Virus record (IMG/VR): IMGVR_UViG_3300046516_001816
Span: 1 to 64,000 of that record
Length of the DNA stretch: 64,000 nt
Strand: one strand, 5' to 3'
This document shows positions 1,414-62,435 of this stretch, piece by piece. The notes beneath the pieces were generated by a model. That model was given only the letters and a program-made list of their open reading frames with translations. It made no database searches and was not told where the DNA came from. The stretch's first letter is position 1, and every line of letters begins with the position of its first letter. The position numbers were made by a program, and so were the translations under genes.

Positions 1414-1466
1414 GCGTCATAAAGCCACTGGGAGCCCCGTAGGAGCTCTCAGTGGCCCTTATGCCC
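1414..1466. terminator. Bidirectional hairpin flanked by TATG(A/C)C motifs
   Basis: Stem GCCACTGGGAGC/GCTCTCAGTGGC between convergent genes, flanked by GCGTCATAA and TTATGCCC. Confidence 0.75.
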
Positions 1467-2297
1467 TTAGGCTTCTGCGTAGACACTCAGCAAGCTTGTC
1501 GTCGTCTTGTTGAGGCTCTCCGTGAGTGCAGTGGCTTTGTACCAAATGGCCACATACTGCTCGACTTCCCGTCCCATCTCGTACGATCCTTCCGCAAGCT
1601 CGTGCAGGATTTGCGGGGTGAGCTGGGCGAGGTCGCCACGCGTGGCTTTGTCGGCGATGATATCGAGATAGTGTGCAGCTTCCTCGATCTTCTTATCCAG
1701 CGTGCGACGGTTGACGTGGTTGATCTGCTCGCTCACCAGATTGAGGGCTTCGAACACCGGCTTCCAGTCGGAGTTGCGTTGGACCACATCGCCATAGAGG
1801 GCGTCGGTTTTGCCGGAACCGGCGATGAAGCATTCGCCGAGCATGCGGTTGAACTCGTCGCGCTGGGCTTTGAGCTGGTGGTAGTAGGCCCGGTCCATTT
1901 TGGTGCTGAGCTGGAAGCTGTGCTCGTTAATGAGCTGTCCCAAAAAGACGGTGAACTTGTTGAGGCGTTCCACAACCTGGACGGCATGAGCAGTCGCCTC
2001 CCCCAGAATGTGCAGATACTGAAGGTACGGGACCCGGAGGCCCTCAGGTACTTTCACCGGCATCTGCGAAAGATTCACATAGTTGCGACCGGCAACCTTC
2101 GAGAGAAACTCGTGCTGCTGCGCGGTAAGCGGCGCAATCGCGGGCGCGTTACGTGACACCAACCCTTGCAGGTGATGCAGCATCGTCTTGGCGACCGGAA
2201 CGATATGTTGCAGGCGTTGTACGGGAGCGGGGATCGAAAGCATCTCCAGTGCGATTTGGTCGCGCTGAGCTTTCAGGTCTTCTACGGGCGTGGTCAT
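1467..2297 (-). CDS. Conserved phiKZ-like protein, probably a virion protein (gp153-like)
   Basis: 276-aa helical ORF with AGGA upstream; divergent from UvsX. Confidence 0.6.
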   Translation of the reverse strand: MTTPVEDLKAQRDQIALEMLSIPAPVQRLQHIVPVAKTMLHHLQGLVSRNAPAIAPLTAQQHEFLSKVAGRNYVNLSQMPVKVPEGLRVPYLQYLHILGEATAHAVQVVERLNKFTVFLGQLINEHSFQLSTKMDRAYYHQLKAQRDEFNRMLGECFIAGSGKTDALYGDVVQRNSDWKPVFEALNLVSEQINHVNRRTLDKKIEEAAHYLDIIADKATRGDLAQLTPQILHELAEGSYEMGREVEQYVAIWYKATALTESLNKTTTSLLSVYAEA

Positions 2298-2413
2298 AAG
2301 CGTGTCCTATGCACTGGGCGAAAAGAGGGGTTGCTATAAAATTGTACCTGCCCGAAGCATTCTTTGGTAGGGCATTACAGATTAATTGGACAACAAGCAC
2401 GGATACAAAAGCA

Positions 2414-3895
2414 ATGCAAATTGACCTTAGAACAAAACTGACGCCGGCTCCGCATGTCAAGTTGCTGATCAACATTGGCGCGTTGCTGGACGTTCCGACT
2501 GGCCACTATATCGAAGGCCGTCGCGGGGAATCGATCCTGCTGGGCGGGCTGGCGCCGATCACCGGGATCGTCGGCATCGGTAACAACTTCAAGTCCACGC
2601 TGATGCACTTCATGACGTTGACCGCCATGAGCCGCATGAAGTTCTCAGCTGGCAAAACGTACGACACCGAAGTGAACATCCACGAATGGCACTTGGCCAA
2701 TATCGTGGCGCGCACCGAATCGTTCTTGGGCGAAGACGTGCTGCAAACCCAGCGCTGGTCGATTACCGACAAGACGATGTACATCGGCGACGAATGGTAC
2801 CGCGAGCACAAGAAGGAGCTCGAGGACAAGGCCAAGCGCAAGGACATCGCGGTGAACACGCCGTTCTGGAATCGCGAACGCAGCGCACCGATGCAGATGA
2901 TGGTGCCGACGTACACCGAGATCGATTCGTTCTCCGAATTCGAAACCTCGGACGTGGTCGATATGCAAGACGTCGATCTGGGCGACTCGAAGGGCAACAC
3001 GATTCACATGCGCCAGGGTCTGCAAAAGACGCGTATCCTGATGGAAGCGCCGCGCATTCACGGCTCGGTCTATGACTACTTGTTGATGACGGCGCACCTG
3101 GGCAAAGAAACGACCATGCAGAACGCGGGTCCGGCGGGCTCGGTGCCGATCGTCAAGCTCAAGCACCTGAAGAACGGCGACAAGATCAAAGGCACGACCG
3201 ACAAGTTCACCTTCGTCACCCACAACTGCTGGCACGCGTTCAATGCGAGTCCGCTGATCAACCAGGGCACGAAGGCACCGGAATATCCGCGTCACCCGGG
3301 CGACGATTTGTTGCTCGACACGGACTTGAACACGGTGCAGATTCGGAACTTGCGCTCGAAGTCGGGCGCCTCGGGCATGGCTCTCACGCTGATCGTGTCG
3401 CAGTCTGAAGGCGTGCTGCCGTCGCTGACCGAATTCCATCACATCAAGGAAAACGAACGCTACGGCATGGAAGGCTCCAACGTCTCGTACTGGCTCACGC
3501 TGTACCCGGCGGCGAAGTTGGGTCGGACCACCGTGCGCTCGAAGATCGACAGCGATCCGCTGCTGCGGCGGGCACTGAACATCACCTCGGAGATGTGTCA
3601 GATGTCGTACCTCTGGCATACGCTGCGTCCCGAGTTCCAGATCACGCCCAAGGAACTGTACGAGAAGCTGAAGGCGGATGGCTACGACTGGAACGTGCTG
3701 CTCAATACGCGCGGCTGGTGGACGCACGAGCTCGGCGAAGCTGATCACTTGCCGTTCCTCTCGGTGATGGATCTGCTGCGTATGACGCTGCCGATCGACG
3801 ATCCGAAGTACTACTTCCCGTACTGGCTCAATGCGGACAAGACGGTGAAGGACGAATACCTTCATCATTTTCAACCTGAACTGAAAGCAGCGTAA
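2414..3895 (+). CDS. uvsX: UvsX/RecA-like recombinase (phiKZ gp152-like)
   Basis: Walker A variant GIGNNFKST, YDTE, and Walker B-like EIDSFS; the N-terminal INIGALLDVPTG is typical of this family. Confidence 0.85.
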   Translation: MQIDLRTKLTPAPHVKLLINIGALLDVPTGHYIEGRRGESILLGGLAPITGIVGIGNNFKSTLMHFMTLTAMSRMKFSAGKTYDTEVNIHEWHLANIVARTESFLGEDVLQTQRWSITDKTMYIGDEWYREHKKELEDKAKRKDIAVNTPFWNRERSAPMQMMVPTYTEIDSFSEFETSDVVDMQDVDLGDSKGNTIHMRQGLQKTRILMEAPRIHGSVYDYLLMTAHLGKETTMQNAGPAGSVPIVKLKHLKNGDKIKGTTDKFTFVTHNCWHAFNASPLINQGTKAPEYPRHPGDDLLLDTDLNTVQIRNLRSKSGASGMALTLIVSQSEGVLPSLTEFHHIKENERYGMEGSNVSYWLTLYPAAKLGRTTVRSKIDSDPLLRRALNITSEMCQMSYLWHTLRPEFQITPKELYEKLKADGYDWNVLLNTRGWWTHELGEADHLPFLSVMDLLRMTLPIDDPKYYFPYWLNADKTVKDEYLHHFQPELKAA

Positions 3896-3916
3896 GCTTT
3901 GAAAGGAAACCGGGCC

Positions 3917-4219
3917 ATGGACTGGATCGAACTCACTCCCGGGCACGAGAACGAAGCGCTCCATATGGGGCTGGAATACGGCGATGAAGTCCTCGTCTTA
4001 AAGACCCATAAGAAGCGCAGCCAGTTAAAGAGCCCGGCAACCTGGACAAGCAGTGGCTTGACGGATGTCTTTCGTGTCGTGGTGATCAATCGCGACAATC
4101 TGCTCGTGCGCCACGACAAGGCCTCCCATTTGCGCTATGTTATCTGGAGACAGGTGCTGGGCTTTCGTAAAGCCGCTAAGCCGTCTCCGGACCCTGAACA
4201 CACTGAACCAACACCATGA
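3917..4219 (+). CDS. Hypothetical protein
   Basis: AAAGGA before ATG 3917; the stop overlaps the next start (ATGA). Confidence 0.65.
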   Translation: MDWIELTPGHENEALHMGLEYGDEVLVLKTHKKRSQLKSPATWTSSGLTDVFRVVVINRDNLLVRHDKASHLRYVIWRQVLGFRKAAKPSPDPEHTEPTP

Positions 4220-6364: not shown

Positions 6365-6382
6365 AGGATAACGGGGTAAACG

Positions 6383-7697: not shown

Positions 7698-7803
7698 ACG
7701 TACCCTGAGAACACCCGGCATACAACGCCTACCACTCCTAGCCATGCCCAAATCATCGGGGTAGGCTAGGAGCGGAGGGCTAAATCGTCCGGTTAACGTG
7801 CTC

Positions 7804-8310
7804 TCACTGGCCCGGGGTTAAGCTCTGGGCCATAAAGGTATCGAAGTCCATTTGTGCCGCATCGCTGTCCATTTCACCGGGGACCACTTCGGGTTCGGGC
7901 AGGCCAACGGGTAACTGCGGTACAGCGCGACGTTCTTGAATCTGACCGTCGATCACCATCCCAGCTTGCATGGCACCCGGGGTCTGGAGGACCTGGGCAA
8001 TCAACGCTGCGGCCTGTGCCTGAGACGCACCGATCTTCTCATCGGTCTTCAGGCGTTTGCGACCGAGGGCGGCGCGGTCCATCCCGTCAAGCGCGGCCAG
8101 CACCACCATCTTGTCGCCCTTTTCCAGACTGTTCAGCTTCTCGCCGTCTTCCCCCATCATGGCGGTGACAATCTGCTGACGTTTCTTCTGGGTATAGGTA
8201 AGGACATGGTCCTCGCCTTCGATCACTTGCACAACAATTGGTGCGGCTTGATTTACACCAATCGTTTGAGGCGTGTGATCGTGTTGCGCTTCATCGTCGT
8301 CATAGTCCAT
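7804..8310 (-). CDS. Hypothetical protein
   Basis: GAGGTG precedes ATG 8310. Confidence 0.7.
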   Translation of the reverse strand: MDYDDDEAQHDHTPQTIGVNQAAPIVVQVIEGEDHVLTYTQKKRQQIVTAMMGEDGEKLNSLEKGDKMVVLAALDGMDRAALGRKRLKTDEKIGASQAQAAALIAQVLQTPGAMQAGMVIDGQIQERRAVPQLPVGLPEPEVVPGEMDSDAAQMDFDTFMAQSLTPGQ

Positions 8311-8421
8311 GACACACCTCGGTAGGCTAGATAGTTTGAGTAACATATCATTCTAATGAGCTTCTTCGCTGAATCTCACTTAAATCAAGCCAAAACGAAC
8401 GGTAAACGAATAGGAGTTGTG

Positions 8422-10295: not shown

Positions 10296-11852
10296 ATGCC
10301 ATCCAACATTATTGCAAGACCCACATTTCAGACGGGACCTCGGGATAACCTGATTACCGTCGACGTCTTCACCGGCACCTCCGGGGGGATTGTCAATTCG
10401 ATTAAAGCGCTTTCGCAAAAGTACGATGTCGATTTGATCGGCATGTTGCGCGCGGGGGCAGCTGTCGCCCAAGCGATTCCCGTGATTGAAGGGATTGCGC
10501 ACGGCAAACTGTTGATGAATCCGCAAGCGGCGATTGCACGGCTACTCACCGCCTCCAACACCTTGGTCGGGGCCCTGGGGGGTCCGATCAATGCCCTGAA
10601 CAGTACCTTCAGTGCGCTCTCGGCCGACGTACAAGCTGGCATTGCTGCGGCCGGTCAAGTGGTCGGGGAAGTGGAAGTGGCCATTGGCGGGGTGGTCTCC
10701 AGTGTGGTCAATGGTGCCATTGGTGACATCCAGGCGCTGGGCGGACTGATCAACCAGTTCGCGGGCGGCAATGGTTTTCTGATGGTGGACGTGCAGGCAC
10801 TCGGAGGCTTTGCCGCCGGCGTGATTAACGAATGTGCCCGCTACGGGATCTCGGGTGCGTTTGCCCAGATGACCAAGAACATCACCGACCCGCGCGTGCT
10901 CAATGCCATCATTGGGTCGACCCTGCCCAACCTGATTTCGGCCTCCGATATTGGAGGCTTGCAGGCGCTGGCCAACGTCGCCAACGTCGTGGGTATTGGC
11001 GCGATCAATCCGCGGATGTTGCCGCAGTTCACCCGGGCGTATGTTCGGATTGGCTCAGGCAGTGTTCAACAGGCCACCCCGTACCAGGACAGTCAGAACT
11101 GGAACGACATGATGGACTGTTACGACACGGCGCAACCGGACTGGAACGTAGCCAGTCGGGCAGGCGACGATCCGAGCGATCCGACCTTGGATATCACCGC
11201 GCTGCAAAACGGCACGGAAGATTTCAATGCGGCGCTCTCGGCAGGGGTGTACAACAACTCGGCCTCGGCGAGCCCGGACGACAATACGCATTTCTATGCG
11301 CTCGCGCCGCTCTATGAGGACACGGACGTCAATCAGCAAATGAAGGACGCCTATCCGAATAGCTATATCGATCCCGCGCTGCGCTCCACCGATCAAGTTA
11401 TCGATCCGCGGCAAGTGCAAAACGATACCACCCCCGCAGTGGATGCGTCCACCAGTGAGACAGCGTATCAGCCGTCGACCAGTGTGACGAATCAAATACC
11501 GGTCAAGCGGGCAGACGGCACCATCAACTCGGCCCAAAAAGCCAAGGAGATGGCCATGGGGTATAACAGCGGAGCGCTCGTGTTTGACGACAATGAAGCA
11601 CCGCAGAACTCCACTGCTACGAATGATTCGGTGGCTGATACGCCCTCGCCCGTCACGTTCTCGCGTAACGGCAAGACGTATATGACCATTACCGGGGGTC
11701 AGGATCGGGGCACGTATCAGATCGAGCCCAACACTACCGGTCAGCAGGCGCAGGCTAATTCGATTAACTGGGGTCAGGGGTATTGGCACAGCGACGAGAA
11801 GTATCTGTACAATCCCGTCGATGCGACCACCTTGCAACCGGTTAAGAACTAA
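10296..11852 (+). CDS. Putative virion structural protein (gp139-like)
   Basis: AGGAG upstream; N-terminal PTFQTGPRDNLITVDVF; Ala/Gly-rich. Confidence 0.6.
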   Translation: MPSNIIARPTFQTGPRDNLITVDVFTGTSGGIVNSIKALSQKYDVDLIGMLRAGAAVAQAIPVIEGIAHGKLLMNPQAAIARLLTASNTLVGALGGPINALNSTFSALSADVQAGIAAAGQVVGEVEVAIGGVVSSVVNGAIGDIQALGGLINQFAGGNGFLMVDVQALGGFAAGVINECARYGISGAFAQMTKNITDPRVLNAIIGSTLPNLISASDIGGLQALANVANVVGIGAINPRMLPQFTRAYVRIGSGSVQQATPYQDSQNWNDMMDCYDTAQPDWNVASRAGDDPSDPTLDITALQNGTEDFNAALSAGVYNNSASASPDDNTHFYALAPLYEDTDVNQQMKDAYPNSYIDPALRSTDQVIDPRQVQNDTTPAVDASTSETAYQPSTSVTNQIPVKRADGTINSAQKAKEMAMGYNSGALVFDDNEAPQNSTATNDSVADTPSPVTFSRNGKTYMTITGGQDRGTYQIEPNTTGQQAQANSINWGQGYWHSDEKYLYNPVDATTLQPVKN

Positions 11853-11868
11853 GCGCTGCATCACCTCA

Positions 11869-11918
11869 CGGCATAAAGGCCCGGGCGCTGGCCCGGGCTT
11901 CTATGCTGTCTTTCTTTT
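11869..11918. terminator. Bidirectional hairpin with CGGCATAA / CTATGCTG flanks
   Basis: GCCCGGG stem between convergent genes. Confidence 0.75.
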
Positions 11919-14072
11919 TTAGTTGTTCGGCACGCCTTGGAAATACATCTTGATAAAGCGTGACGGCAACGCATCGCCCATGAAGGAGGCAAAGTGGGAC
12001 GGCGTCAACCAGCTGCGCCACTGTTGCATCTGCATGGTGAGGTTGAGTTTGAAACGACGGAACGAGTAGATCTGATCCGCAAGCCCGAGCCCGCCCAGCA
12101 CCGCCATGTAATCGGCAAATGGCGTGTCGCCATCAAAGAGCCCGTTCAGTGAGGTGACGGCATTCACGGCGGCATCGCCGACCGCCCCCACCGCGGAGAG
12201 TGCTGCACCCCCCGTCTCCGACTGACTGACGACGTTGTCCTTGACGCCCCCATTCACGTCCGAGGTGCCCGCAGCGTCATTGACCAACCCACTCACGGCT
12301 CCCGTGACCGCTCCGCCTGCCATGCCCAACGCGCCCAAGAACGACGACGCAGCACTGGTCATGCCTTGGGTAATCGGCAGATACACCAGGTTCGAAAGAT
12401 CAAGCACCGTGAAGGTCACATCAATGGCCATGGCGTTGCCATCGTCATCGAAAGGCAGGTTGGCTGTGCCCCGTTGCACCGAGAGACTGTCAATCATGCC
12501 GAGGCGAATCTGGCAGCGACCCCGGTCATAGAGCTCACAGATAAACGGTGAGTTATACGACTGCGGACCCGTGGCCAAGGGCAGCGCGCCGGCGAGCAAC
12601 ATCGCGAGCGGCACGTACAGATTCGTGAGCTGCGAGATCGGGTTGCCGTACGGGCTCACCAGATTGATAGTGTACGACGAGCGCGAGAGTTGCGCGGTGG
12701 CTGACGCCCAGTGTTTGGGAATATCCACAAACGCCGAGCCACCGAGGGCAGCCAGCCCCGACATCCCAAAGCCATCCGCCACCCCCGAGATCAAGTCCTT
12801 CATGCCGTCGAGTGCGTGCCCCACGACCTTACCCATAAAGCCATCACTGATGTCGCCATCTTCGATGTCAAAACGGGTGGACCGTGATTGACTGGCCATG
12901 CTGTTGATCTTGCTGGCGAGGGCCGAGTCTTCCGCGCCGTTACCAAAGGTGTCGGTAACCGCACCCGTGGCATTGACCCGGAACGACACGAAGGCCCCGC
13001 CCTCATCCAACTCAGACTGATAAAACGCCCCCAAGCTATTGAGGTTCGGTCCATTGGTGTCAATCGCTTCGGTGCCTGCGGAGTTATTGCTGTCGTTGGA
13101 GATCAGCTCATTGGCACTCGCCACCTGAGAGGCCGGCACACTGAACCAGTTCTTCAGATAGACCAAGAAGTCGGTCTTGTTGGTATCCTGCAAGGTGGAG
13201 GCCGGACCAAACACACTTTGCAACCCCTTCTGAAGATTGGCTGACGCATTGTCGCTAAAGACCTGCGAGTACAGCTGCATCTGCTTGCGCTCGAGGCGCT
13301 TGGCACGGTTGGCCAATGCATACACGTCCACCCCACCGCCAGCAAAGAAGATATCCGGCAACAAGTCATGCATCTTCTGCAACCCGCTCTTATCGAACTG
13401 GTAGCTGTCCGCAATGCTGTTGGTATTGACCGAGGAGACGTCCGGGTCACCGCCCACCGGGTCATCGTAGTTGCTACCCGACAGCGCACGCGGCACAATG
13501 CCTCGGTTCACAGCGATCTGGTTGACGATGGTTTGCACCACCTGCCAATACACCGGCATCGTGGGCTTGAGGTAGTAGTACTTGGTCGAGGGCTTGCCCG
13601 CAAAGAACTTAAACGCCATGCCTGCCAAGTGAATGGCCAGCAGCTTCCAGCTCATTACCGAGACGACAAAGCCCACCGCGCGACCGATGTTGTACAGCAA
13701 GCCGGTGGCGTCGCGCCCCGTGCGCGCCAACACGCCGGCGCCCGTGTTATAGAAGTGCGTGAAGAACTGCGTCATCGAGTTAAACTGCGGCACCCCAAAA
13801 CGCAGATGGATGATCTGATTGTGATCGTCGATCGCTTCGGAGTAATACACGCCCATGCTCTTACCACCCTGAAAGCGCGTGCTGGCTTTGGGGTCGGCAT
13901 AGCGTGTGAACTGCGGGGGCGGGTTGATACAATGATTCCCACCCGGTGTGGTATCCGTGTACTTCAAAGACGCGCTGGTGAAAAAGCGATTCGCTTTGTC
14001 AATCGCCTCCAAGTCAGTCGAATTCAACAGAAAGGACTGCTTCATCCAGCTTGTGTTAGTTGCAGTAGCCAT
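11919..14072 (-). CDS. Virion baseplate/tail-associated protein (gp182-like)
   Basis: AAGGAGG upstream; motifs KYTDTTPGGN..INPPPQFTRYAD, MG.YYSEAIDD, SPYGNP; lies downstream of the giant tail protein. Confidence 0.75.
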   Translation of the reverse strand: MATATNTSWMKQSFLLNSTDLEAIDKANRFFTSASLKYTDTTPGGNHCINPPPQFTRYADPKASTRFQGGKSMGVYYSEAIDDHNQIIHLRFGVPQFNSMTQFFTHFYNTGAGVLARTGRDATGLLYNIGRAVGFVVSVMSWKLLAIHLAGMAFKFFAGKPSTKYYYLKPTMPVYWQVVQTIVNQIAVNRGIVPRALSGSNYDDPVGGDPDVSSVNTNSIADSYQFDKSGLQKMHDLLPDIFFAGGGVDVYALANRAKRLERKQMQLYSQVFSDNASANLQKGLQSVFGPASTLQDTNKTDFLVYLKNWFSVPASQVASANELISNDSNNSAGTEAIDTNGPNLNSLGAFYQSELDEGGAFVSFRVNATGAVTDTFGNGAEDSALASKINSMASQSRSTRFDIEDGDISDGFMGKVVGHALDGMKDLISGVADGFGMSGLAALGGSAFVDIPKHWASATAQLSRSSYTINLVSPYGNPISQLTNLYVPLAMLLAGALPLATGPQSYNSPFICELYDRGRCQIRLGMIDSLSVQRGTANLPFDDDGNAMAIDVTFTVLDLSNLVYLPITQGMTSAASSFLGALGMAGGAVTGAVSGLVNDAAGTSDVNGGVKDNVVSQSETGGAALSAVGAVGDAAVNAVTSLNGLFDGDTPFADYMAVLGGLGLADQIYSFRRFKLNLTMQMQQWRSWLTPSHFASFMGDALPSRFIKMYFQGVPNN

Positions 14073-21749: not shown

Positions 21750-21815
21750 TGTTGGCTCCACTTAACTGGGTCTACTCTGACCCCTCATAGATTTTCGCTA
21801 TTTAAGGAAACAAAC

Positions 21816-23441: not shown

Positions 23442-23443
23442 AC

Positions 23444-30312: not shown

Positions 30313-30325
30313 TGGAGTTTTGAAA

Positions 30326-31094: not shown

Positions 31095-31136
31095 GGCTAC
31101 AGAGGCTCCTAGGAGCCTCTGTAGCCTTTTATGCCG
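31095..31136 (+). terminator. Perfect palindrome followed by TTATGCCG
   Basis: GGCTACAGAGGCTCCT-AGGAGCCTCTGTAGCC then TTTTATGCCG. Confidence 0.8.
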
Positions 31137-31162
31137 CATGCCTGCATTCAATCTTTTTTTAC

Positions 31163-32435: not shown

Positions 32436-32623
32436 GTCACCACAGTCGGCGCGCTGCGCGAAGAGTAAAAAGCTACTCACGGGAGGTATCTCATGAATAC
32501 GCTTTTACTTCTTCGCCAGCTGAGCAGCAGTCGTTAGTGCACTTCTTAGCGCACTAACGGATGACTTGTTCTCCTGGGCGAGAGGGGCAACCCTCTCGCT
32601 TTATGCCCTCTTTCTTTTTTGGT

Positions 32624-33285: not shown

Positions 33286-33509
33286 CTTACTACGTCGTCT
33301 GGGCCCTGATCTATTTTCTGCTGGGCCTCGCTTGGTTTGACCGTCATCCGGATGTGTGGAAGATCATCCTGAAACATTCGGGTAGCGGCGCTGGAGCCGT
33401 GATCACGGGCAACATCGTCATCCTCACCTGGATCGGCTGGTGCTTTGCCTATCAGCATCACCTGCGTCGCGAGCGCCTCGCTAAACGCAACAAGTTTCGT
33501 CGTAATTAA
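33282..33509 (+). CDS. Small membrane protein (2 TM)
   Basis: ATGA overlap with the previous gene; two hydrophobic stretches; Arg-rich tail. Confidence 0.7.
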   Translation: MTYYVVWALIYFLLGLAWFDRHPDVWKIILKHSGSGAGAVITGNIVILTWIGWCFAYQHHLRRERLAKRNKFRRN

Positions 33510-33534
33510 AAACAAAAACCCAAGGAAAAAAGCC

Positions 33535-34008: not shown

Positions 34009-34012
34009 TTGA

Positions 34013-34054
34013 CGGCATAAGAGCCCTCCCCGGTTGGGGAGGGCTTCTATGACG
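34013..34054. terminator. Bidirectional hairpin with CGGCATAA / CTATGACG flanks
   Basis: Stem AGCCCTCCCC/GGGGAGGGCT between convergent genes. Confidence 0.8.
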
Positions 34055-34091
34055 TGTGCTTATTTTTTTGGTCTGAACGAGCCCCAAAACC

Positions 34092-45126: not shown

Positions 45127-45131
45127 CTTGA

Positions 45132-45169
45132 CGGCATAAGGGGAGGGCGCACGCCCTCCCTCTATGACG
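45132..45169. terminator. Bidirectional hairpin with CGGCATAA / CTATGACG flanks
   Basis: Stem GGGAGGGCG/CGCCCTCCC between convergent genes. Confidence 0.8.
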
Positions 45170-45589
45170 TTAGAATAACCGAGCGTCTTGACGACGTTCT
45201 AGCTTGGCGACGAGCAAGTCCAAGTATGCCTCGATTGCCCGCTGTTTCTGGTACTGCTCTCCCAACCAGTGGCACTCACGGGGAAAGGTCGCCGCAAACT
45301 CACCGGCAACATCCCGGAGCAGTTGGGGTGCGTCCGCCGTTACGATAGCCGAAATCCGGTACACTGCCATGCGCCGCGTCGGTACCCACAAGCGTTGAAA
45401 GATCCGCTTGTAATACGTAGCTTGGCAATTCAGTGTCACCTGACAGCCGTGCACACTGTGCACCGTCAGACTCGCGACGTGATTGACCACATCCTGATCG
45501 AACATGACGCGGGAGGGGCCTGTCGCCCGCTTACATGTTTGAACAAGTGCATTGAAGAGAGAACCCCCGAAACCACCGAAAAAAGCCAT
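45170..45589 (-). CDS. Hypothetical protein
   Basis: 139-aa ORF ending at the hairpin. Confidence 0.65.
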   Translation of the reverse strand: MAFFGGFGGSLFNALVQTCKRATGPSRVMFDQDVVNHVASLTVHSVHGCQVTLNCQATYYKRIFQRLWVPTRRMAVYRISAIVTADAPQLLRDVAGEFAATFPRECHWLGEQYQKQRAIEAYLDLLVAKLERRQDARLF

Positions 45590-46857: not shown

Positions 46858-46938
46858 GCCTAAGTCCTCGTGGGTTCCGGATCACACGATTTGGCGGCAT
46901 AAGTGCCGGACCGAAGCCCGGCACCTTGGCTCATGGAG

Positions 46939-47065: not shown

Positions 47066-47500
47066 TCAATCCTTGGCGGCCTTGAGTTTCAGCTTGTACT
47101 CGGGCGCATGCCCCTTGAACTCAGGGTCGATCGACTTGAGATGGATCTCGTAGCCGTTGCCGGACGTGGTGATGTTCGCACGGATGTGCTGATTGGCGAG
47201 CGACTCCAGCTTGGACTTGAGACCCCCGGCTGCGCCCTGCAACTTCTTGAGCACGGCCTGGAAGCGCTTGTCTGTGCCTTCGTCCTTCTTCGCTTCGAGG
47301 GCAATCGTTTCCATTGGTGCGTCGATCTCTTCGGTCGCGATGAACTGAGACTCTACCGGCACCTGTTCCACCAGGCGTTCACCCAGTTGCACGAAGAACT
47401 CGCGCGTTTCGTCTTCGGACAGATGGCCGATCGATTCGAGGGCGAGTTCCACCGGTGTTTTGGACTGAGGTTCTGCCCAGGTAAAGATTCCTTTCTTCAT
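47066..47500 (-). CDS. Putative head protein with A-x-E protease sites
   Basis: AAGGAG upstream; acidic N-terminal half with ALE, ATE, ALE. Confidence 0.7.
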   Translation of the reverse strand: MKKGIFTWAEPQSKTPVELALESIGHLSEDETREFFVQLGERLVEQVPVESQFIATEEIDAPMETIALEAKKDEGTDKRFQAVLKKLQGAAGGLKSKLESLANQHIRANITTSGNGYEIHLKSIDPEFKGHAPEYKLKLKAAKD

Positions 47501-49078: not shown

Positions 49079-49170
49079 CATCCTCATTGGAGAGTGCAGT
49101 GCACAGAATAAGGGGTAAATCTTATTCGGCATTAGAGCGCCTGCCACGAAAAGGTAGGGTTAGGTATGTC

Positions 49171-49680
49171 CTGGCCCCCGCCGAGCCCGCCTGCGCCCGC
49201 TGCGCGCCCCCCAGCCTGGTCCTCGCCCGCCCCGCGCCCCGGCCGCCGCCCGCCGCGCCCATTACGTTCTCATTTGGAGGTTTTCTTTACCATCCGGTAG
49301 ATCTTCTACCAACATTAAACCAGTCAGTGCTTTGCCGTTGTTTGCTTCGCCGTTAAGGCTTTGCTACCTAGAGGATGGGCCATCGAGCCCATCCGTCTAT
49401 ACATCTACTTCGATTTTTCCAAAAAGAAAACACTTCATGCAAGGGGTTGGTCGTTCTCCCCTGAGCTGGTCCTGTTGGGACCAGCGATCTTTTCATAGAC
49501 ACCAATATGTCATTCTAGTATTTTCTTACTGCATACTGGACATAGTTATGCATTGAGGTACTATAGAACAATAAGAAAAACAAGAGGTACCCTCAATACT
49601 TATATATGGGAAGTTATGGTTTTGGAAGAGGGGCCCATATTCTAGTAAAAGGGGGAGACCCCCTTTTACTCATATATAAG
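49171..49680. other. Non-coding divergence region: C-rich tract followed by AT-rich nested palindromes
   Basis: 49171-49260 is almost all C/G. Palindromes at 49552-49597, 49599-49608/49671-49680 and 49644-49670. Confidence 0.7.
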
Positions 49681-49763
49681 ACTGTCTACAGTTGGGGAGA
49701 AACCTTTACAAACTAACTTCAGACATATATCACCTACCTGATCCCCAATCACGGAGGTGCGAG

Positions 49764-50084
49764 ATGAAACGCAAACGAGGCAGCAGTCGTCTGATCAAAC
49801 GCCCCAGGCAGTTTTCGATTCAGGACACGCCCACGCCTGAGCTCCAGGACGAGCTTGAGCAGTGCCGCATTGTGACGCGCGCGCTTAACGATGCGTTCGA
49901 ACAAATCTGGGAAGCGCAACCGCCCCACGGCGATTACGGTATTCGTCCCAATATCAAGGAGTACGAGCTCACTCGGCTCTTGGGCCGTGCTGAACGCGGC
50001 ATCCTGGATGTGCTTAACTACTCGATGGCTCAGACGCATGACATCGAGCACGAGTTGCGTCGTCGAAAACAATACAAGCGATAA
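49764..50084 (+). CDS. Hypothetical (early-type) protein
   Basis: GGAGG before ATG 49764; ATATATCA motif at 49724. Confidence 0.7.
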   Translation: MKRKRGSSRLIKRPRQFSIQDTPTPELQDELEQCRIVTRALNDAFEQIWEAQPPHGDYGIRPNIKEYELTRLLGRAERGILDVLNYSMAQTHDIEHELRRRKQYKR

Positions 50085-50151
50085 AAACGGGGCAGGGCTT
50101 TGGCCTTGCCTTTATGCCGCTTGGCAAACTTTACTGCGCACCCAGTAGCGT

Positions 50152-52415: not shown

Positions 52416-53141
52416 ATGAGCCAGAAGAATCAGGGCAACTCGCACAACCTGCTCTACCAGGACTACCAATTCCCGCTCGAAGACCGCAAGTTCCTCGACG
52501 ACGTCGCGTACCACATCTACTCCGTGCCGGCCAAGCGCCTGACGGACGCGATCCGTGAAACGCTGCGCATCCTCACGAACTTCAAGGTCAAGATCCAGTA
52601 CGCGCTGCACGTGACGGATTCGTCGCCGCAGACCGACGCTTGGCGCGTGGTCAACGAACACATCGCGCTGATCGGCCAGCACGACCTGCCGTTCGTCACG
52701 ATCGAAATCGCCAACGGTCCGCTCATGGTGCAAGACAAGGCGATTTACCTGTCGCCTCTCGAACTCGCGAAGTCGTTCGACGCGATGCTGCTCGAGATGT
52801 CGGGTTCATTCACCGAATGGTGGCTGGAAGGCACCCAGACCTTCGAGCAAGACAAGTCCAAGCAACTGTTCAACAAGTACACGGTGGCCAATACGTTCCA
52901 GGTGGCTACCCTCGGCTACGAACTGCGCCGCATCCTGCTCGACACGTCCACGGCCTGGGAAGGTCGCTGCTACAAGGACGCGCACGGCAAGCTGCAACTG
53001 ATGCTCACGCAGAAGGGTCCGATGCAGTTCGACGACGAGCGCGTCGTCGTAAAGGTCTCGATCATTCCGCCGGCCGTGTTCAATGCGGCTGTAGTGGAAG
53101 TGACCGAGCGCGAAAAGCAGAAGGCTCAGCAACCTGCGTAA
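52416..53141 (+). CDS. Hypothetical protein
   Basis: AAGGA upstream; strong codon bias; followed by a UUCG hairpin + TTATGCCG. Confidence 0.78.
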   Translation: MSQKNQGNSHNLLYQDYQFPLEDRKFLDDVAYHIYSVPAKRLTDAIRETLRILTNFKVKIQYALHVTDSSPQTDAWRVVNEHIALIGQHDLPFVTIEIANGPLMVQDKAIYLSPLELAKSFDAMLLEMSGSFTEWWLEGTQTFEQDKSKQLFNKYTVANTFQVATLGYELRRILLDTSTAWEGRCYKDAHGKLQLMLTQKGPMQFDDERVVVKVSIIPPAVFNAAVVEVTEREKQKAQQPA

Positions 53142-53230
53142 GTGTAATACCTTCATCGTTACAAAGTGTCATTGCGCCCCGGGTTCGCCCGGGGCCTTAT
53201 GCCGTCAACTAAACCAAAACGGAGCAGTCC

Positions 53231-53701
53231 ATGTCTGATATCAAACATTCCCCCGAAGTGCAACCCACCATCGACACCAAAGACATCGAGAACTTCATTG
53301 ACCGTCGCCAGTGGGAAATGCTTCCGGAGAAAACGTACCTGCAACGCTTCACGGTTACGCACGCGCTGCGCCGCCAACTGCCCTACGGCAAGTGGACCTG
53401 TGCGGATGGTCGTGAAGTCGTGTTCAACCGTGAGTACCAACCGATCCTGCAACGCCTCAACGGCGTCTGCGCCTACGCCAATCCGGGCGAGTGGGTCGAG
53501 AACATCATCGACACCGAAATGTACTACGACGACCTCACCAACCCGATCGGTGCTACGAAGTACGCCGGCCATCTGCCTGAAGCCCGCGTGCGTCGTATGT
53601 GCAAGCGCTCGATGTTGATTTGTTTGAAGGTTCTCAAGGAGTTCACCCCGGAAGAAAGGGGATCGGTGAGCCGTGAGTGGAGCATCAAGCAAAGCTATTA
53701 A
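53231..53701 (+). CDS. Hypothetical protein
   Basis: GGAG upstream; motif LPYGKWTCADGREVVFNREYQPI. Confidence 0.75.
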   Translation: MSDIKHSPEVQPTIDTKDIENFIDRRQWEMLPEKTYLQRFTVTHALRRQLPYGKWTCADGREVVFNREYQPILQRLNGVCAYANPGEWVENIIDTEMYYDDLTNPIGATKYAGHLPEARVRRMCKRSMLICLKVLKEFTPEERGSVSREWSIKQSY

Positions 53702-53755
53702 GTTAGCTGGCATAAACCCCTCCCTCACGGGAGGGGCGTAGACTGCCTTCTTTTT

Positions 53756-54559
53756 TTAGCGATTGCCGCCGAGCATCAACCGCAACGTGCGCGTGTAGCG
53801 TTCCCGGTCGTTCATATACGCGACCTTGGTCCACTTGTCCCGCAGATGATCCTGGTAGTTCTGTTCGGCATCCGCGTAACCGTCGATGATGTCCTTGATC
53901 CGGCCAATCGTCTGACCCCCACGCAGTTCCCCGACATCCAGGTCAATCACGTAGTTGTTGTAGATATAGGACTTGACCGCGTACTCCACCAGCTTGGCAA
54001 AGACGTGGTAGCTGCGCAGCTGGATGTTGTTCAGGTTCTCATCGTTGGCGACGATACAGCGCAGGTATGCGTTGGCCGGCATCGTCATCACGTCTTCGAT
54101 CAGCACGATGTTCTCGCCAATCAAACTGATCCGGGCAGTGGAGGTTTGTGGAATCATCCCCATCGCATCCATCACGGCTTGTCCGGCTTGGAGCATCATG
54201 TTGTTCTGACCGTTCGCCGCGACCCCCGCAGCACTGATACGCGACGGATCGGCAAAGGACACGTTGAGCACCGACATGATGGACGCGCCATTGGTGCGAT
54301 CTTTCGGGATGCGGTAGACCGACTGGTACATCTCGTCGCCCCCGGTGCGCAGCCCATCCAGACAGATCCAGATCTCACGGCCTCCCACGAGGTTACAGTC
54401 GACCAACACGCGCGGCCGCATAACCAAGGCCATAATCTGCTCATCGACGCTCTTGGGCGTATCGCGCCAGCGCTCGGTGCGGTTCACAAAAACCGTATGC
54501 AGGATTTCCTTGGGAATCCGGAACTGCACTTCGGTGAGGGCTTTCGAAATTGGGTTCAC
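53756..54559 (-). CDS. Conserved phiKZ-like virion protein
   Basis: AGGAG with GTG start; motifs NPISKAL..V.FRIP.EIL and AVKSYIYN. Confidence 0.75.
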   Translation of the reverse strand: MNPISKALTEVQFRIPKEILHTVFVNRTERWRDTPKSVDEQIMALVMRPRVLVDCNLVGGREIWICLDGLRTGGDEMYQSVYRIPKDRTNGASIMSVLNVSFADPSRISAAGVAANGQNNMMLQAGQAVMDAMGMIPQTSTARISLIGENIVLIEDVMTMPANAYLRCIVANDENLNNIQLRSYHVFAKLVEYAVKSYIYNNYVIDLDVGELRGGQTIGRIKDIIDGYADAEQNYQDHLRDKWTKVAYMNDRERYTRTLRLMLGGNR

Positions 54560-54640
54560 ACTGGACTCCTAAAAAATTCGGTGATATATCATATTCTTGA
54601 GTCGCCTATCAAATGATTTCGATTTACAAGGAGCTAAACC

Positions 54641-55913: not shown

Positions 55914-55917
55914 CTGG

Positions 55918-56505
55918 CTTAAGGACATCTTCAGGCTATGGGAGACCGTAGCCTGGAAAGTGTTCTTAGGTAACAAGGTTCTCTCGGAAAGGGCCGCAGC
56001 GTCGCGTCGTTGCGTACCCGTCTCTAGACCTGTCACGCGCCTAACCGTTGGGGATACCGCCGTAAAGAGGATACGGTATGGACCCCCAACTGACAGGCTT
56101 ACCGAGACATCCGAGAGCTACCTGTCAGTTCTTCCACCTACAACGAACAAATACAAGCCTGCTTCTTAGTGGGTTGATCATAGCGGTCTGACCAATGTCG
56201 AGACTTGAGTTCCGTTTACCGGGTTGATCGCCTGGACCGGTTCCGAATGAGGACAGAGGGTTACTGATACATGTCGGGGAGAAGACCAGTATAAGTCCGG
56301 AGTAGCTTCTGGGGATAGGTCTCGGTGTATCCGCATCGCGCGCGATCGTAAGGTCAGGAAGACCAAATCTATTTGCCAGCGTCCAGGATCGGGAAACCGA
56401 GGAGACGTTTGTGGCCCAACCATGCAATTGCGGCTGGTTTGGAATACCTACAAAACGGGGTAGGCATTCGAAAGCAGCTGCGGGTAGTAATGCGAGTGAG
56501 ACCAA
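55918..56505 (+). ncRNA. Candidate structured ncRNA or long UTR (region A)
   Basis: Many nested inverted repeats and no credible ORF. Confidence 0.55.
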
Positions 56506-56510
56506 TCATC

Positions 56511-56990
56511 ATGCATAAAAGACCTACCAAAATCATCGTCCTGCGACACGCAGAGAAACCGATCGATCCGATCGACCAGCGCTTAGCGCATCGCGGATAT
56601 AAACGGGCTGAGTACTTGGCGGAGTTCATTCCGAAGAACTTCGGGCGACCGAGCATGATCTTCGCGACCGAACCCACCAAGAGCAGCTTCCGACCGTTTC
56701 TGACGATGCAACCATTATGGGATGCAGTAAAAGAATCCTGGATGGATGTATCGATTGACGATGAGGCCGCTTTACACCTCGGGCACAAGTTGCGCGCAGG
56801 AGACCTCTCAGTTGGCGAAAACGTCGTCGTCTGCTGGCACCATGGCAAGATCCCGGAATTGATGAAGGGGCTCGGGTGCAGCGTGCACGACTACCCGGCG
56901 AAGTGGCCGGATAACGATTACAGCACCATCTACGTCGTGACCTATGAAAAGGGCGAGGCGGTGGTGTCCCAGTATAAACAGCTCTTCTAG
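56511..56990 (+). CDS. Histidine phosphatase superfamily protein (SixA/PGM-like)
   Basis: Motifs [30 protein letters not shown]. Confidence 0.85.
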
Positions 56991-56998
56991 GATTCGCA

Positions 56999-57241: not shown

Positions 57242-57250
57242 CAGTCTTTT

Positions 57251-58144
57251 TCGGCGCGCGCCGGACGACTGGTAAGTGCGGGATACAGACCGCGCTCACC
57301 GGGGGCTCTCGTGATTCAATCAAGATCTTCTCCCGTTATAGGGACGTCCATCTTGGCGGGCGACGCGGCTTGCATACCCGCGTCGTAACCCGCGCGTGCG
57401 CGCGCCGACGGGTGAGCGTCAATCGGTGCAGTATCTAGATGTTGGTTTGTTTAGGTATTTCGGTTGACTCTTTGGAAAAGCGGCTCTTTGAAAAAGCGGT
57501 TTGGCTGACTTCGATCTCGGGCGTGGGAACCTGGGGTGGACGGGCACTCATTGACCGACTGGCGCTCACCGCTACTCGCCCTGCCTTTCGCAGGGCGCAT
57601 CTGGGCCCAATGTACACCAGCTCTTGTCGCTCGCCGCGGGCTTACATTTTTGGCGATTTGGATTCACCGCGGCTGGCGGGGGCAACAATAACGTACATTG
57701 AGGAAGATTGGCCACGACCCATTGGCCCCATCAACGCTACGGGCGCGAGAACGCGAAAGAGTACAGGTGTCAAAATGAAATAGGTTTAGCCCAGCGCACT
57801 TTTTCATGATCCCAAACCGCAAGGACTAACGGCACGCTTGGCGCCTGCCGGAAGCACGCGGGAGAGGGACGGCGATACCATTCCTATGAGTAATGGCTCT
57901 TTTTAAAGAGTCCGACGTACGAGACCCGTCCACGGGCATTACGGAGCCAAGCGGAGCTGCCTGCGCGATCTACGCATCGCCAATAGGAGTGACCGCCTAC
58001 CTGCTGTAAGCGTGAGTCTCACTGAAGTCGAGATAGGACCGCAACTGCTCAGCGTGGGAAATATAGAGCACACCCGGAAGGGCTTCCAGGATCGTGAGCG
58101 CGAGCCACGAAGCGAAGCCCTTCCCCCTTCTTTCTTTTATGCCG
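57251..58144 (+). ncRNA. Candidate large multi-domain structured ncRNA (region B, about 900 nt)
   Basis: At least four long-range closing helices; ends in a terminator + TTATGCCG; no credible ORF. Confidence 0.6.
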
Positions 58145-58230
58145 TCAGGACGCGTTTACAGCCTCTGTAGCGGCTTGGTTACAATAAAGAAATACCGGAC
58201 ACCGGAATCATGTGTCCATAAGGAGCTAGC

Positions 58231-60218: not shown

Positions 60219-60586
60219 TAGATTCTCCAGCTGAGCTCCGGTTGTTGCGGAGTTGGCTGGGGGATCCGAATATGCCGTCGATTGATTTCACGATGCTCTT
60301 CCAGACGCTGTACGACGCGATAGCGACACGAGACAAATATTATCAGCTCGCGCTTTATCATCTGGCGACCCGGATGGCGCATCACGACTATTTAATCGAA
60401 ACCAACACCCTGAGTCAAATGGACCGGGATGACTTGGAGCGCATGATCATTAACGCCGGGCACGCGATCGCCCAGCAACTCGATGCCATGCGACTTTATC
60501 ATCCGACAGGTCAATTACTCTATCGATTTCGCGAGTATCGACATGACAACATTCTCATCTTTGAACTCGCGCCGCTCACCCGATAA
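60191..60586 (+). CDS. Hypothetical protein (paralog array member)
   Basis: AAGGAG before ATG 60191. Confidence 0.72.
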   Translation: MGSAPSLVVIDSPAELRLLRSWLGDPNMPSIDFTMLFQTLYDAIATRDKYYQLALYHLATRMAHHDYLIETNTLSQMDRDDLERMIINAGHAIAQQLDAMRLYHPTGQLLYRFREYRHDNILIFELAPLTR

Positions 60587-61423: not shown

Positions 61424-61461
61424 TTAAAAGAGGGTCCGCCCTCTTTTTTTTGTGAGCGATC

Positions 61462-61890
61462 ATGACGTATAACTATCAACTCGGCCAGATTCTGAGCTTT
61501 GACACGAATGCCGCTTCGGTGCTCGGCCAGAGCTTTGAGAACGTGACGGTCCTCTCCTTGATGGATCCGCAATCGGCGAACAACGTGATTGACATCGTAG
61601 GCATGCACGCCGCAGTGTATCCGTTGCTGGTGCAAGCGGGCTTGTCGGTGCCCAACGATCCGAGTCAGTACAACTATCTCAAGATCCGGACCCAGGCGGG
61701 TAAGGTCACGTGTCTGGGGATGCCCTGGATTAACGAGTCGACCATTACGGCCACCACCAACCAAGTCATCACGGCGGTGATTGCCGGGGTGACGGCCGCC
61801 GACGTGCAAGGCGTGCAGAACGCACTGATTGCCAACGGCTACAACCAGTTTAAAGTGACGATCACGCCGCTCTCCACCACGGGTGGTTGA
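61462..61890 (+). CDS. Conserved phiKZ-like protein upstream of the DNA polymerase (gp49-like, SH3-like fold possible)
   Basis: SFDT...VLG..F.NV.V...H..VYP...NDP.QYNY...G.PWI pattern; synteny. Confidence 0.72.
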   Translation: MTYNYQLGQILSFDTNAASVLGQSFENVTVLSLMDPQSANNVIDIVGMHAAVYPLLVQAGLSVPNDPSQYNYLKIRTQAGKVTCLGMPWINESTITATTNQVITAVIAGVTAADVQGVQNALIANGYNQFKVTITPLSTTGG

Positions 61891-62003
61891 TAGTATGTAG
61901 GGCATAAAGCAGGGAAGATAGTAGTTCGGGGGTAGTACGAGCAGGACCGCAGGTTGACCATGTTGTACCGTTGTAGAAGTGTTTCAGTTTCCTTGGTAAT
62001 TGT

Positions 62004-62037
62004 GCCTAGTCATCCCCCCGGGTGACTAGGTCTTTTT
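62004..62037 (+). terminator. Rho-independent terminator
   Basis: Stem CCTAGTCATCC/GGGTGACTAGG followed by TCTTTTT. Confidence 0.75.
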
Positions 62038-62079
62038 GCCGGCATGTGGTTGATTAGTATAAAACTTATCGCGTTTGTA

Positions 62080-62435
62080 TATGTTACGACGGAGTGCCAT
62101 GCTCCGTGTAGGAAGGGTGTTGATGCGTGCTCCTCGGGCTTTTGGTGGCGGGCGCGGGCAGCAACACTAATGGGATCGGCTAAACCCATTTGCTAAGTGT
62201 CGAAAGATGACGACAGCGAGAATCTCGTTGGGGAACGAGAAGACGCCAACCAGGAAGGGTTGAAGCTGGTTTCTTTAAAGGTGGTGTGCCAAGGCTTTTC
62301 CTTGGGGCATGCGGTGCATCACTGAACACGGGGCTGATCGCGCCCTCGTGAAGGAGAAGCTAAGCTCCCGTTCCTGTTTTTCACGTTGGGGAGGGTCTTT
62401 CGGGAACCCTCCCCTTCTTTTTTCCTTTTATGCCG
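62080..62435 (+). ncRNA. Candidate stand-alone sRNA made of tandem hairpins (region C)
   Basis: Seven or more consecutive hairpins bounded by two terminators. Confidence 0.5.

What the first reader, a model, noticed from the sequence alone, without database searches (positions are those of the whole stretch)
1414..62435. Recurrent hairpin + (T/C)TATG(C/A)CG signal at gene ends
GC-rich hairpins are followed, in the direction of the upstream gene, by TTATGCCG or a close variant, often with little or no U-tract. Plus strand: 1459, 11901, 31129, 32602, 34047, 45162, 50112, 53197, 58137, 62428. Minus strand: 1414, 11869, 34013, 45132, 46895, 53708, variant 7716. At convergent junctions the motif usually sits on both sides of one hairpin with no gene to drive. 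That favours a sequence-specific termination or processing signal for the phage RNAPs over the known phiKZ TATG late promoter, although antisense initiation is possible.
Basis: partly seen in the sequence, partly recalled or inferred. Interest (0 to 1): 0.65.

Follow-up and report, generated by a model that had tools for sequence, protein, structure and literature searches.

The report
phiKZ-type hairpin-TATG transcription terminators
The recurring "GC hairpin + TTATGCCG" signal is real and is this uncultivated giant phage's version of a transcription stop signal already mapped by RNA 3' ends in phages phiKZ and 201phi2-1; it is a new member of a known kind.

Summary
YTATGMCG occurs 19 times in the window against 5.4 expected. 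The whole excess is intergenic copies that abut a GC hairpin just after a same-strand gene.

The window is the first 64 kb of a 285-kb phiKZ-like jumbo phage. Its nearest named relative is Burkholderia phage FLC9.

The element matches the conserved phiKZ terminator motif (hairpin + YTTATKYYGT) published in 2024. All eight validated 201phi2-1 termination sites have the same architecture, with the RNA 3' end two bases past TATG.

Four lines of evidence favour a terminator over a promoter:
- The element sits at 75% of convergent junctions and 4% of divergent junctions across six genomes.
- UUCG loops lie on the sense strand.
- Its position is conserved after orthologous genes.
- Stems co-vary while TATG stays invariant.

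Two points remain unproven: whether it is specific to phage polymerases, and whether its TATG core is read by the pocket that recognises the TATG late promoter.

The parts
1414..1458 (-). Terminator element after gene 1467-2297(-): hairpin 1422-1458 plus TTATGACG at 1415-1422. It is the minus side of a bidirectional element.
   Evidence: dG -26.4
1424..1467 (+). Terminator element after gene 970-1404(+): same hairpin plus TTATGCCC at 1459-1466.
   Evidence: dG -24.9
11868..11898 (-). Terminator element after virion-protein gene 11919-14072(-): hairpin 11879-11898 plus TTATGCCG at 11869-11876.
11877..11909 (+). Terminator element after gene 10296-11852(+): same hairpin plus CTATGCTG at 11901-11908, followed by a T-run.
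31095..31137 (+). One-directional terminator after gene 30254-31078(+): 14-bp hairpin plus TTTTATGCCG. An AT-rich promoter-like motif follows at 31165.
   Evidence: dG -30.6, z -6.6
32577..32609 (+). Hairpin plus TTATGCCC at 32601-32608, then a T-run. The upstream gene call is uncertain.
34012..34048 (-). Terminator after virion structural gene 34092-35078(-): hairpin plus TTATGCCGTC.
   Evidence: dG -26.1, z -5.7
34021..34055 (+). Terminator after gene 33445-34008(+): same hairpin plus CTATGACG, then a T-run.
45131..45160 (-). Terminator after ORF 45170-45589(-): hairpin plus TTATGCCGTC.
45140..45170 (+). Terminator after the large terminase gene 42880-45126(+): same hairpin plus CTATGACG. 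It is conserved at the orthologous junction in 15 uncultivated relatives, with co-varying stems and invariant TATG.
46894..46925 (-). One-directional terminator between genes 47066-47500(-) and 45631-46857(-): UUCG-loop hairpin plus TTATGCCG.
50089..50120 (+). Hairpin plus TTATGCCG just after ORF 49692-50084(+), 32 nt before gene 50152.
53176..53205 (+). One-directional terminator after gene 52416-53141(+), 26 nt before the ATG at 53231. A hairpin + TATG follows the orthologue in 3 of 4 relatives examined.
53707..53737 (-). Terminator after gene 53756-54559(-): hairpin plus TTATGCCA. The plus side has no TATG but has a T-run.
60221..60280 (+).
62385..62436 (+). Variant: hairpin 62385-62417, an 11-13-nt T-rich tract, then TTATGCCGTC, 73 nt before the DNA polymerase gene (ATG 62509). 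The same layout lies upstream of the polymerase gene in FLC9 and LucasX.
58137..58146 (+). TTATGCCGTC after a C/T-rich tract with no adjacent stable hairpin. It does not fit the terminator-only model.
   Evidence: z 0.55
7715..7766 (-). Weak variant GTATGCCG after a loose hairpin, downstream of gene 7804-8346(-). Doubtful member.

Best explanation
These are factor-independent transcription terminators of the phiKZ type.

How it works: the RNA of the upstream gene folds into a GC-rich hairpin. In place of a run of U, the hairpin is followed by the conserved segment Y-UAUG-CC. By homology with mapped sites in 201phi2-1, the transcript ends two bases past TATG, about 7-8 nt after the stem, and the next base is the conserved G. 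At convergent gene pairs one hairpin carries the motif on both strands and stops transcription from both sides.

Shown here: architecture, placement, conservation and RNA-level strand bias.

Shown elsewhere for homologous elements: RNA 3' ends and terminator activity.

Inferred:
- The weak U/A-rich upstream half of the hybrid (UUAU) lets the hairpin release the RNA.
- The pyrimidine-end / next-base-G arrangement acts as a pause signal that replaces the pausing role of a U-tract.
- The non-U positions stay conserved across phages of 37-57% G+C because a polymerase reads them.
For: Motif identity: the logo here is hairpin-Y-TATG-C-C-G-T-c. The published phiKZ consensus, from 61 terminators defined by ONT-cappable-seq 3' ends, is stem-loop + YTTATKYYGT (PMC10914365). 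Motif A of 201phi2-1 (n = 59) resembles it.

Register: all 8 validated 201phi2-1 termination sites fall at hairpin-TTTATGNN^ or a one-base variant, and the next base is G in 7 of 8.

Unbiased tetramer test: TATG is the most enriched of the tetramers just 3' of strong hairpins (among those seen at least 8 times).
- This genome: 34 observed, 2.6 expected.
- phiKZ, FLC9, RP12, RSL2 and LucasX show the same, as does 201phi2-1.
- It is not enriched in RSL1, SPN3US or AR9.

Placement:
- 42 of 46 intergenic copies lie just after a same-strand gene.
- Convergent junctions carry it at 10/17, 18/20, 12/18, 16/18, 9/17 and 19/22. Divergent junctions carry it at 0/17, 1/19, 0/19, 1/19, 1/17 and 2/22.
- 61 of 298 genes are followed by the element.

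RNA-level signature: UUCG against CGAA on the sense strand at tandem junctions is 15:1 here and 76:15 over seven genomes.

Evolution:
- Orthologues of genes followed by the element are also followed by one in FLC9, 19/28 against 8/92, p = 1e-9. RP12, LucasX, 201phi2-1 and phiKZ are also significant.
- At the terminase junction in 16 phages the stems are replaced, with 8 of 11 pairs showing double compensatory changes, while ATAA and TATG are invariant.

Host phage: phiKZ-type split RNA polymerase genes are present.
Against: - There is no RNA evidence for this genome.
- Two copies, 58137 and 62428, are not hairpin-adjacent. A hairpin-driven terminator does not explain why the full 10-mer is kept there.
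- ONT 3' ends cannot tell termination from processing.
- Terminator-trap readouts by fluorescence also respond to RNA cleavage or stability.
- 7 of 34 tandem sites also carry CATA on the 5' side, against a 1% background. A one-directional terminator does not need this.
- The pause-signal step is inference from general knowledge of multisubunit RNA polymerases and was not tested.
Confidence: 0.8

Rival explanations
1. Dual-function element. It terminates the upstream transcript, and at tandem junctions the embedded TATG (G = +1) is also a late start site for the non-virion polymerase, so that stop and restart overlap by about 3 nt. This does not exclude the best explanation.
For: - The phiKZ late promoter core is TATG with G = +1. 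It is necessary, and downstream sequence matters.
- The gp123 homologue of this phage keeps the pocket residues S144, F151, H331, S334 and Q466, with H185Y and Y406F.
- At about 10 tandem junctions the next start codon is only 25-34 nt after the motif, which leaves no room for another promoter.
- The hairpin-distant copies at 58137 and 62428 both face a downstream gene. The 62428 layout is conserved before the DNA polymerase gene in FLC9 and LucasX.
- Promoter-terminator coupling is reported as common in bacteria (bioRxiv 10.64898/2026.08.19.745784).
Against: - The best-studied late promoter, P119L, has no hairpin and no YYG after TATG.
- Divergent regions that must hold promoters for late genes such as tail sheath and the tail fibre-like protein have lone TATG but never TATGCCG.
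- Half of the copies face a convergent gene.
- Three tandem sites are followed by a separate promoter-like motif.
- Short spacing can be simple genome compaction.
Confidence: 0.2
2. Late promoters only. The hairpin is incidental or helps DNA melting, and copies at convergent junctions drive antisense RNAs.
For: The TATG core is identical to the phiKZ late promoter. Some terminators in published phage maps lie antisense to genes.
Against: - The element is at 0/17 divergent junctions here and 5/113 over six genomes.
- 42 of 46 intergenic copies follow a same-strand gene.
- Published 3' ends map at the motif.
- UUCG loops show sense-strand bias.
- The CCG extension is present only on the side of a terminating gene at tandem junctions, 22/34 against 0/34.
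Confidence: 0.04
3. RNA processing or stability element. Transcripts read through, a nuclease cuts at or beyond UAUGCCGU, and the hairpin protects the new 3' end.
For: - Sequence is conserved beyond the hairpin.
- ONT 3' ends and fluorescence traps do not separate cleavage from termination.
- The 201phi2-1 elements work in uninfected cells, which contain host RNases.
Against: - The 3' ends lie at a fixed 8 nt from the stem in 8 of 8 sites, the classic distance for intrinsic termination.
- The motif is absent from RSL1, which infects the same host genus as RP12 and RSL2. It therefore tracks the phage lineage and not the host's RNases.
- No known nuclease site matches the motif; this rests on my own knowledge.
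Confidence: 0.1
4. Dispersed palindromic repeats (REP- or MITE-like) or a DNA-level signal unrelated to transcription.
For: There are many intergenic palindromes with a shared flank, and some stems recur (GGGAGGGC, GCCCGGGC).
Against: - Stems differ between copies and co-vary between orthologous sites.
- Orientation is strictly tied to gene ends.
- The tetraloop bias is specific to RNA.
Confidence: 0.03

Closest known systems
Conserved phiKZ intrinsic terminator motif (61 sites; Putzeys et al. 2024, PMC10914365) and 201phi2-1 terminator motif A (59 sites; PMC11512511)
   Same: - A GC stem-loop is directly followed by Y-TTATG-YY-G-T.
- It lies a few tens of nt after a gene, and many copies are bidirectional.
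- It occurs in a phage with split multisubunit RNA polymerases.
- It follows orthologous genes.
   Different: - Here the tail is G+C-rich and sharper (TATGCCGTC), in a 57% G+C genome of an uncultivated Burkholderiales-type phage.
- The first T of TTAT is often C, so the invariant core is TATG and not TTAT.
- No RNA data exist for this phage.
Canonical bacterial intrinsic (Rho-independent) terminator
   Same: GC hairpin, with RNA release about 7-9 nt after the stem. An upstream complement (CATAA here, an A-tract there) makes it bidirectional.
   Different: There is no U-tract, only 2-3 U in the first 8 nt. Conserved G, C, C, G positions have no role in the canonical model. A standard scan misses 7 of 8 sides.
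phiKZ non-virion RNA polymerase late promoter (TATG, G = +1; PMC4666361, PMC12809450)
   Same: The four-base core is identical, and it is read on the non-template strand, which has the same sequence as the RNA.
   Different: Promoters need no hairpin (P119L) and show no conserved YYG. The element studied here is tied to gene ends and absent from divergent promoter regions.
Promoter-coupled terminators in bacteria (Fletcher et al., bioRxiv 2026)
   Same: One DNA segment may serve both the end of one transcription unit and the start of the next.
   Different: That work concerns sigma-70 polymerase, where termination sequences contribute to promoter function. Coupling here is only a hypothesis.

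Membership tests
phiKZ-type conserved terminator | GC-rich stem-loop directly followed by YTTATKYYGT | tested here: met
   Logo from 34 sites: Y-TATG-C(0.79)-C(0.88)-G(0.74)-T(0.65). Hairpins of dG -16.6 to -28.5 end 0-3 nt before TATG at 14 window sides.
phiKZ-type conserved terminator | Lies shortly downstream of a co-oriented gene | tested here: met
   42 of 46 intergenic copies follow a same-strand gene. The median distance from stop codon to TATG is 42 nt.
phiKZ-type conserved terminator | RNA 3' ends map at the motif | not testable with these tools
In 201phi2-1, 8 of 8 published termination sites fall at or 1 nt before TATGNN^.
phiKZ-type conserved terminator | Host genome is a phiKZ-like phage with virion and non-virion split RNA polymerases | tested here: met
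   PHROG RNA polymerase beta families hit at 21816-27832. The gp123 homologue is at 249401-251110 of the record. Relatives are FLC9, RP12 and RSL2.
phiKZ-type conserved terminator | Same positions as in phages with mapped terminators (orthologous gene ends) | tested here: met
   Fisher p = 0.004 against 201phi2-1, 0.03 against phiKZ and 1e-9 against FLC9.
Canonical intrinsic terminator | U-tract (at least 5 T in 8) right after the stem | tested here: not met
   Only 31095-31136 passes the scan in 30-50 kb. T-rich flanks occur at 8 of 254 strong-hairpin sides genome-wide, against 34 with TATG.
phiKZ late promoter | TATG with transcription starting at G, upstream of late genes, with no hairpin needed | tested here: inconclusive
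   The core is present. However, the element is absent from all 17 divergent regions, and 53 of 65 intergenic copies are hairpin-bound. Start sites cannot be tested here.
REP/MITE-like dispersed palindromes | Copies share one sequence family including the stem | tested here: not met
   Stems differ between sites and co-vary at orthologous sites.

The most novel reading that the evidence does not exclude

On this reading, a promoter-like contact made during elongation holds the enzyme just as the hairpin forms and takes over the role of the U-tract. The same segment could then serve as a restart site at tandem junctions. One four-base word would mark both the ends and the starts of transcription units in this clade.

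In favour: TATG, and not TTAT, is the top-enriched word after hairpins in seven phages. It is absent in SPN3US, whose gp123 pocket residues differ.

Against: the mapped 3' end is 2 nt past the register used in initiation. The pocket is described as incomplete in the transcribing complex. The 201phi2-1 elements also work with host polymerase.
Probability: 0.15. Interest if true: 0.7.

Novelty: new member of a known kind. Interest (0 to 1): 0.35.

Why it matters
- Annotation: the signal marks operon ends in jumbo phages that standard terminator predictors miss. It follows 61 of 298 genes here, so it can be used to annotate transcription units in uncultivated phiKZ-like genomes.
- Evolution: it is conserved in phages of Pseudomonas, Burkholderia, Ralstonia and Xanthomonas across 37-57% G+C. 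It is absent from SPN3US, AR9 and the unrelated Ralstonia phage RSL1. This points to a lineage-specific readout, most likely by the phage's own unusual RNA polymerases, whose termination mechanism has not been studied.
- Mechanism: the shared TATG core with the late promoter gives a concrete biochemical hypothesis that can be tested.
- Applications: these short terminators without a U-tract are candidate parts for G+C-rich hosts.

Tried and rejected
- Near relatives: megablast against named phages found none.
- Supplementary tables: the TSS/TTS tables of the phiKZ and 201phi2-1 papers are not held. The 2014 phiKZ RNA-seq paper was not held under the id I tried.
- Lone-TATG test: I looked for lone TATG upstream of genes as a promoter signal. 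It is uninformative, because even phiKZ, with 66 known late promoters, shows 88 observed against 88.5 expected. A promoter/terminator co-variation test therefore could not be made this way.
- Loose hairpin criterion: a minimum-energy fold of 44 nt does not discriminate in this G+C-rich genome. I replaced it with compact-hairpin tests.
- Covariance model: the ungapped alignment of window sites was out of register. I dropped the model in favour of direct tests.
- Loop bias on the strict hairpin set: TTCG and CGAA were not asymmetric there. The asymmetry appears once sites are oriented by the upstream gene.
- Further loci: the search for related loci with protein 52416-53141 found nothing. The orthologues were reached through record handles instead.
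- Literature: searching for the literal motif returned only primer sequences.
- Rfam and tRNA scans of the window gave no hits.


Full report
**1. What the window is**

The window is bases 1-64000 of a 284,983-bp IMG/VR virus record with 56.7% G+C. It encodes:
- phiKZ-type virion RNA polymerase beta-like subunits (21816-27832);
- a 2537-aa tail-fibre/lysozyme-like virion protein;
- tail sheath, large terminase, a UvsX-like recombinase and a DNA polymerase.

By the polymerase subunit, the nearest named phages are Burkholderia phage FLC9 (52.6% aa) and Ralstonia phages RP12/RP31 (about 45%). Xanthomonas, Pseudomonas and other phiKZ-like phages are further off. No named phage is close at the DNA level.

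**2. The observation**

Counts:
- YTATGMCG occurs 19 times against 5.4 expected. TTATGCCG occurs 10 times against 1.5.
- In the whole record TATGCCG is the most abundant intergenic 7-mer. 47 of its 65 copies lie in the 9% of the genome that is intergenic.

- All 17 coordinates were verified.
- Fourteen sides have a compact GC hairpin ending 0-3 nt before TATG.
- 58137 has no hairpin. 62428 has a hairpin, a T-rich spacer and then the motif. 7716 is a weak variant.
- One more site, at 60221-60280, was missed.
- The seven strict matches inside genes are about what chance gives.

**3. An unbiased test**

I took every strong compact hairpin (at least 8 bp) and counted tetramers in the 9 nt after the stem on both strands. 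Among tetramers seen at least 8 times, TATG is the most enriched:
- this genome: 34 observed, 2.6 expected;
- phiKZ 68/6.3, FLC9 52/2.1, RP12 85/4.5, RSL2 32/2.9, LucasX 103/4.8;
- 201phi2-1 51/3.8.

It is not enriched in three controls:
- RSL1, an unrelated 58% G+C jumbo phage of Ralstonia (2 of 179 sides);
- SPN3US, which uses T-runs;
- AR9.

Aligned on TATG, the logos read TATG-C-C-G-T-c here and TATG-Y-Y-K-T in phiKZ. The invariant core is therefore TATG, preceded by T or C.

**4. What is already known**

- Putzeys et al. 2024 mapped phiKZ RNA 3' ends by ONT-cappable-seq. They reported that 61 terminators share a stem-loop followed by YTTATKYYGT.
- The 201phi2-1 study found the same motif at 59 terminators and validated eight in a terminator trap in uninfected Pseudomonas chlororaphis.
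- I placed the eight published termination coordinates on the 201phi2-1 sequence. All eight lie on hairpin-TTTATGNN^ or a one-base variant. The RNA ends 2 nt past the G of TATG, 8 nt after the stem, and the next base is G in seven of eight.
- The window's elements have the same architecture. By homology their predicted 3' ends are listed.

**5. Terminator or promoter?**

The phiKZ late promoter is TATG with G as +1. [quoted passage not shown] The rival reading is therefore serious. Seven results argue that the hairpin-linked element is primarily a terminator.

(a) Placement relative to genes. 42 of 46 intergenic copies follow a same-strand gene. The downstream gene is convergent in 20 cases.

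(b) Junction type. With my own gene calls for six genomes, the element is at 84 of 112 convergent junctions and at 5 of 113 divergent ones (0/17 here). Divergent regions before late genes do contain lone TATG, but never TATGCCG.

(c) Hairpin attachment. 53 of 65 intergenic TATG[CA][CT]G copies are hairpin-bound, and most of the rest are chance overlaps with start codons.

(d) RNA-level strand bias. At tandem junctions the hairpin carries a UUCG loop on the upstream gene's sense strand far more often than the complement. The ratio is 15:1 here and 76:15 over seven genomes. This is a property of RNA, not DNA.

(e) Direction of the CCG extension. It is found only on the side of a terminating gene at tandem junctions, 22/34 against 0/34 for the mirror side.

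(f) Separate promoters. At 31129, 71357 and 219451 a separate bipartite AT-rich promoter-like motif follows the element by 36-38 nt.

(g) The best-studied late promoter, P119L, has neither hairpin nor YYG.

**6. Evolution**

- Genes followed by the element here have orthologues that are also followed by one. In FLC9 the count is 19/28 against 8/92 (p = 1e-9). RP12, LucasX, 201phi2-1 and phiKZ are also significant. SPN3US has none.
- Downstream of the terminase gene, 15 of 18 readable uncultivated relatives (53-77% aa identity) have CATAA or a one-base variant (AATAA, TATAA), a hairpin, and then Y-TATG-N-Y-G. The stems are entirely different.
- In the alignment, ATAA and TATG are invariant. 8 of 11 predicted pairs show compensatory double changes.
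- The tandem site at 53197 is likewise conserved in 3 of 4 relatives.

**7. Mechanism**

Supported by homology: hairpin-driven release about 8 nt after the stem.

Inferred:
- The UUAU part gives a weak upstream hybrid.
- The 3'-pyrimidine / next-G arrangement resembles the general elemental pause signature of multisubunit polymerases. This rests on my knowledge and was not tested.
- Conservation of G, CC and G at 37-57% G+C implies a sequence readout by protein.

Whether that protein is the phage polymerase is open, because the 201phi2-1 elements also work in uninfected cells.

**8. Loose ends**

- Copies at 58137 and 62428 sit 7-13 nt beyond any hairpin, behind a T-rich tract. The 62428 layout is conserved before the DNA polymerase gene in FLC9 and LucasX.
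- About ten tandem sites lie only 25-34 nt before the next start codon.
- 7 of 34 tandem sites also have CATA on the 5' side.
- These points keep a dual stop/restart function alive (about 0.2).
- The gp123 homologue here keeps the core TATG-pocket residues, while SPN3US, which lacks the element, differs at several. That is a single contrast and the alignment is weak.
- The pocket is described as incomplete in the transcribing complex.

**9. Verdict**

The feature is real and strong. The element belongs to a terminator family published in 2024, so this is a new member of a known kind. The modest additions are its clade-wide conservation, TATG as the true core, and the fixed 3'-end register.

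No RNA data could be obtained for this genome.

Noticed in passing
window 31140-31185 (+), 49700-49745 (+), 54560-54600 (both strands); record 69247, 71395, 78749, 84025 (both strands), 127658, 194034, 219488: A bipartite AT-rich motif, roughly ATTCAAAG - 13 nt - ATATATCA - 5 nt - CTGA. It is always intergenic and lies 30-120 nt upstream of a gene on the same strand. It looks like the counterpart of the conserved phiKZ early (virion polymerase) promoter. Three copies lie 36-38 nt after a hairpin-TTATGCCG element.
   Followed up: partly
window 11909-11921, 32610-32622, 34055-34072, 53738-53756; record 73960, 95485, 238650, 254838: On one side of many bidirectional elements the motif is followed, after 4-8 nt, by a run such as CTTCTTTTTTTGG. 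On the other strand this is an A-rich tract just after the convergent gene's stop codon. Its role is unknown. It is too far from the stem to be a normal U-tract.
   Followed up: no
window 53205-53231 and many intergenic regions of the record (for example 92740, 192117, 238270, 251165): A shared leader just before start codons, CTAAACCAAGGA(A/G) then 6-8 nt then ATG. AAACCAA has 38 intergenic copies. It is probably a conserved ribosome-binding context.
   Followed up: no
window 49148-50151, 55914-56998 and 57242-58230: Stretches of about 1 kb with no confidently coding ORF in my codon-usage gene calls. The first holds three strong hairpins (49373, 49465, 49644) and a promoter-like ATATATCA at 49725. 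They may hold small genes or non-coding RNAs.
   Followed up: no
record 144334, 154367, 169586, 212175, 222425, 227661, 228397, 230263 (outside the window); window 61426-61455: A second class of gene-end hairpins followed by ordinary T-runs, concentrated at 144-230 kb of the record. The two terminator classes may belong to different temporal gene classes or different polymerases.
   Followed up: no
window 14148-21761 (-): A 2537-aa ORF matching the phiKZ-type giant tail-fibre family, with an internal lysozyme/endolysin-like domain at residues 2038-2336. A lone TATG lies 24 nt upstream of its start in the 54-nt divergent region shared with the virion polymerase genes, and is a candidate late promoter.
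   Followed up: partly
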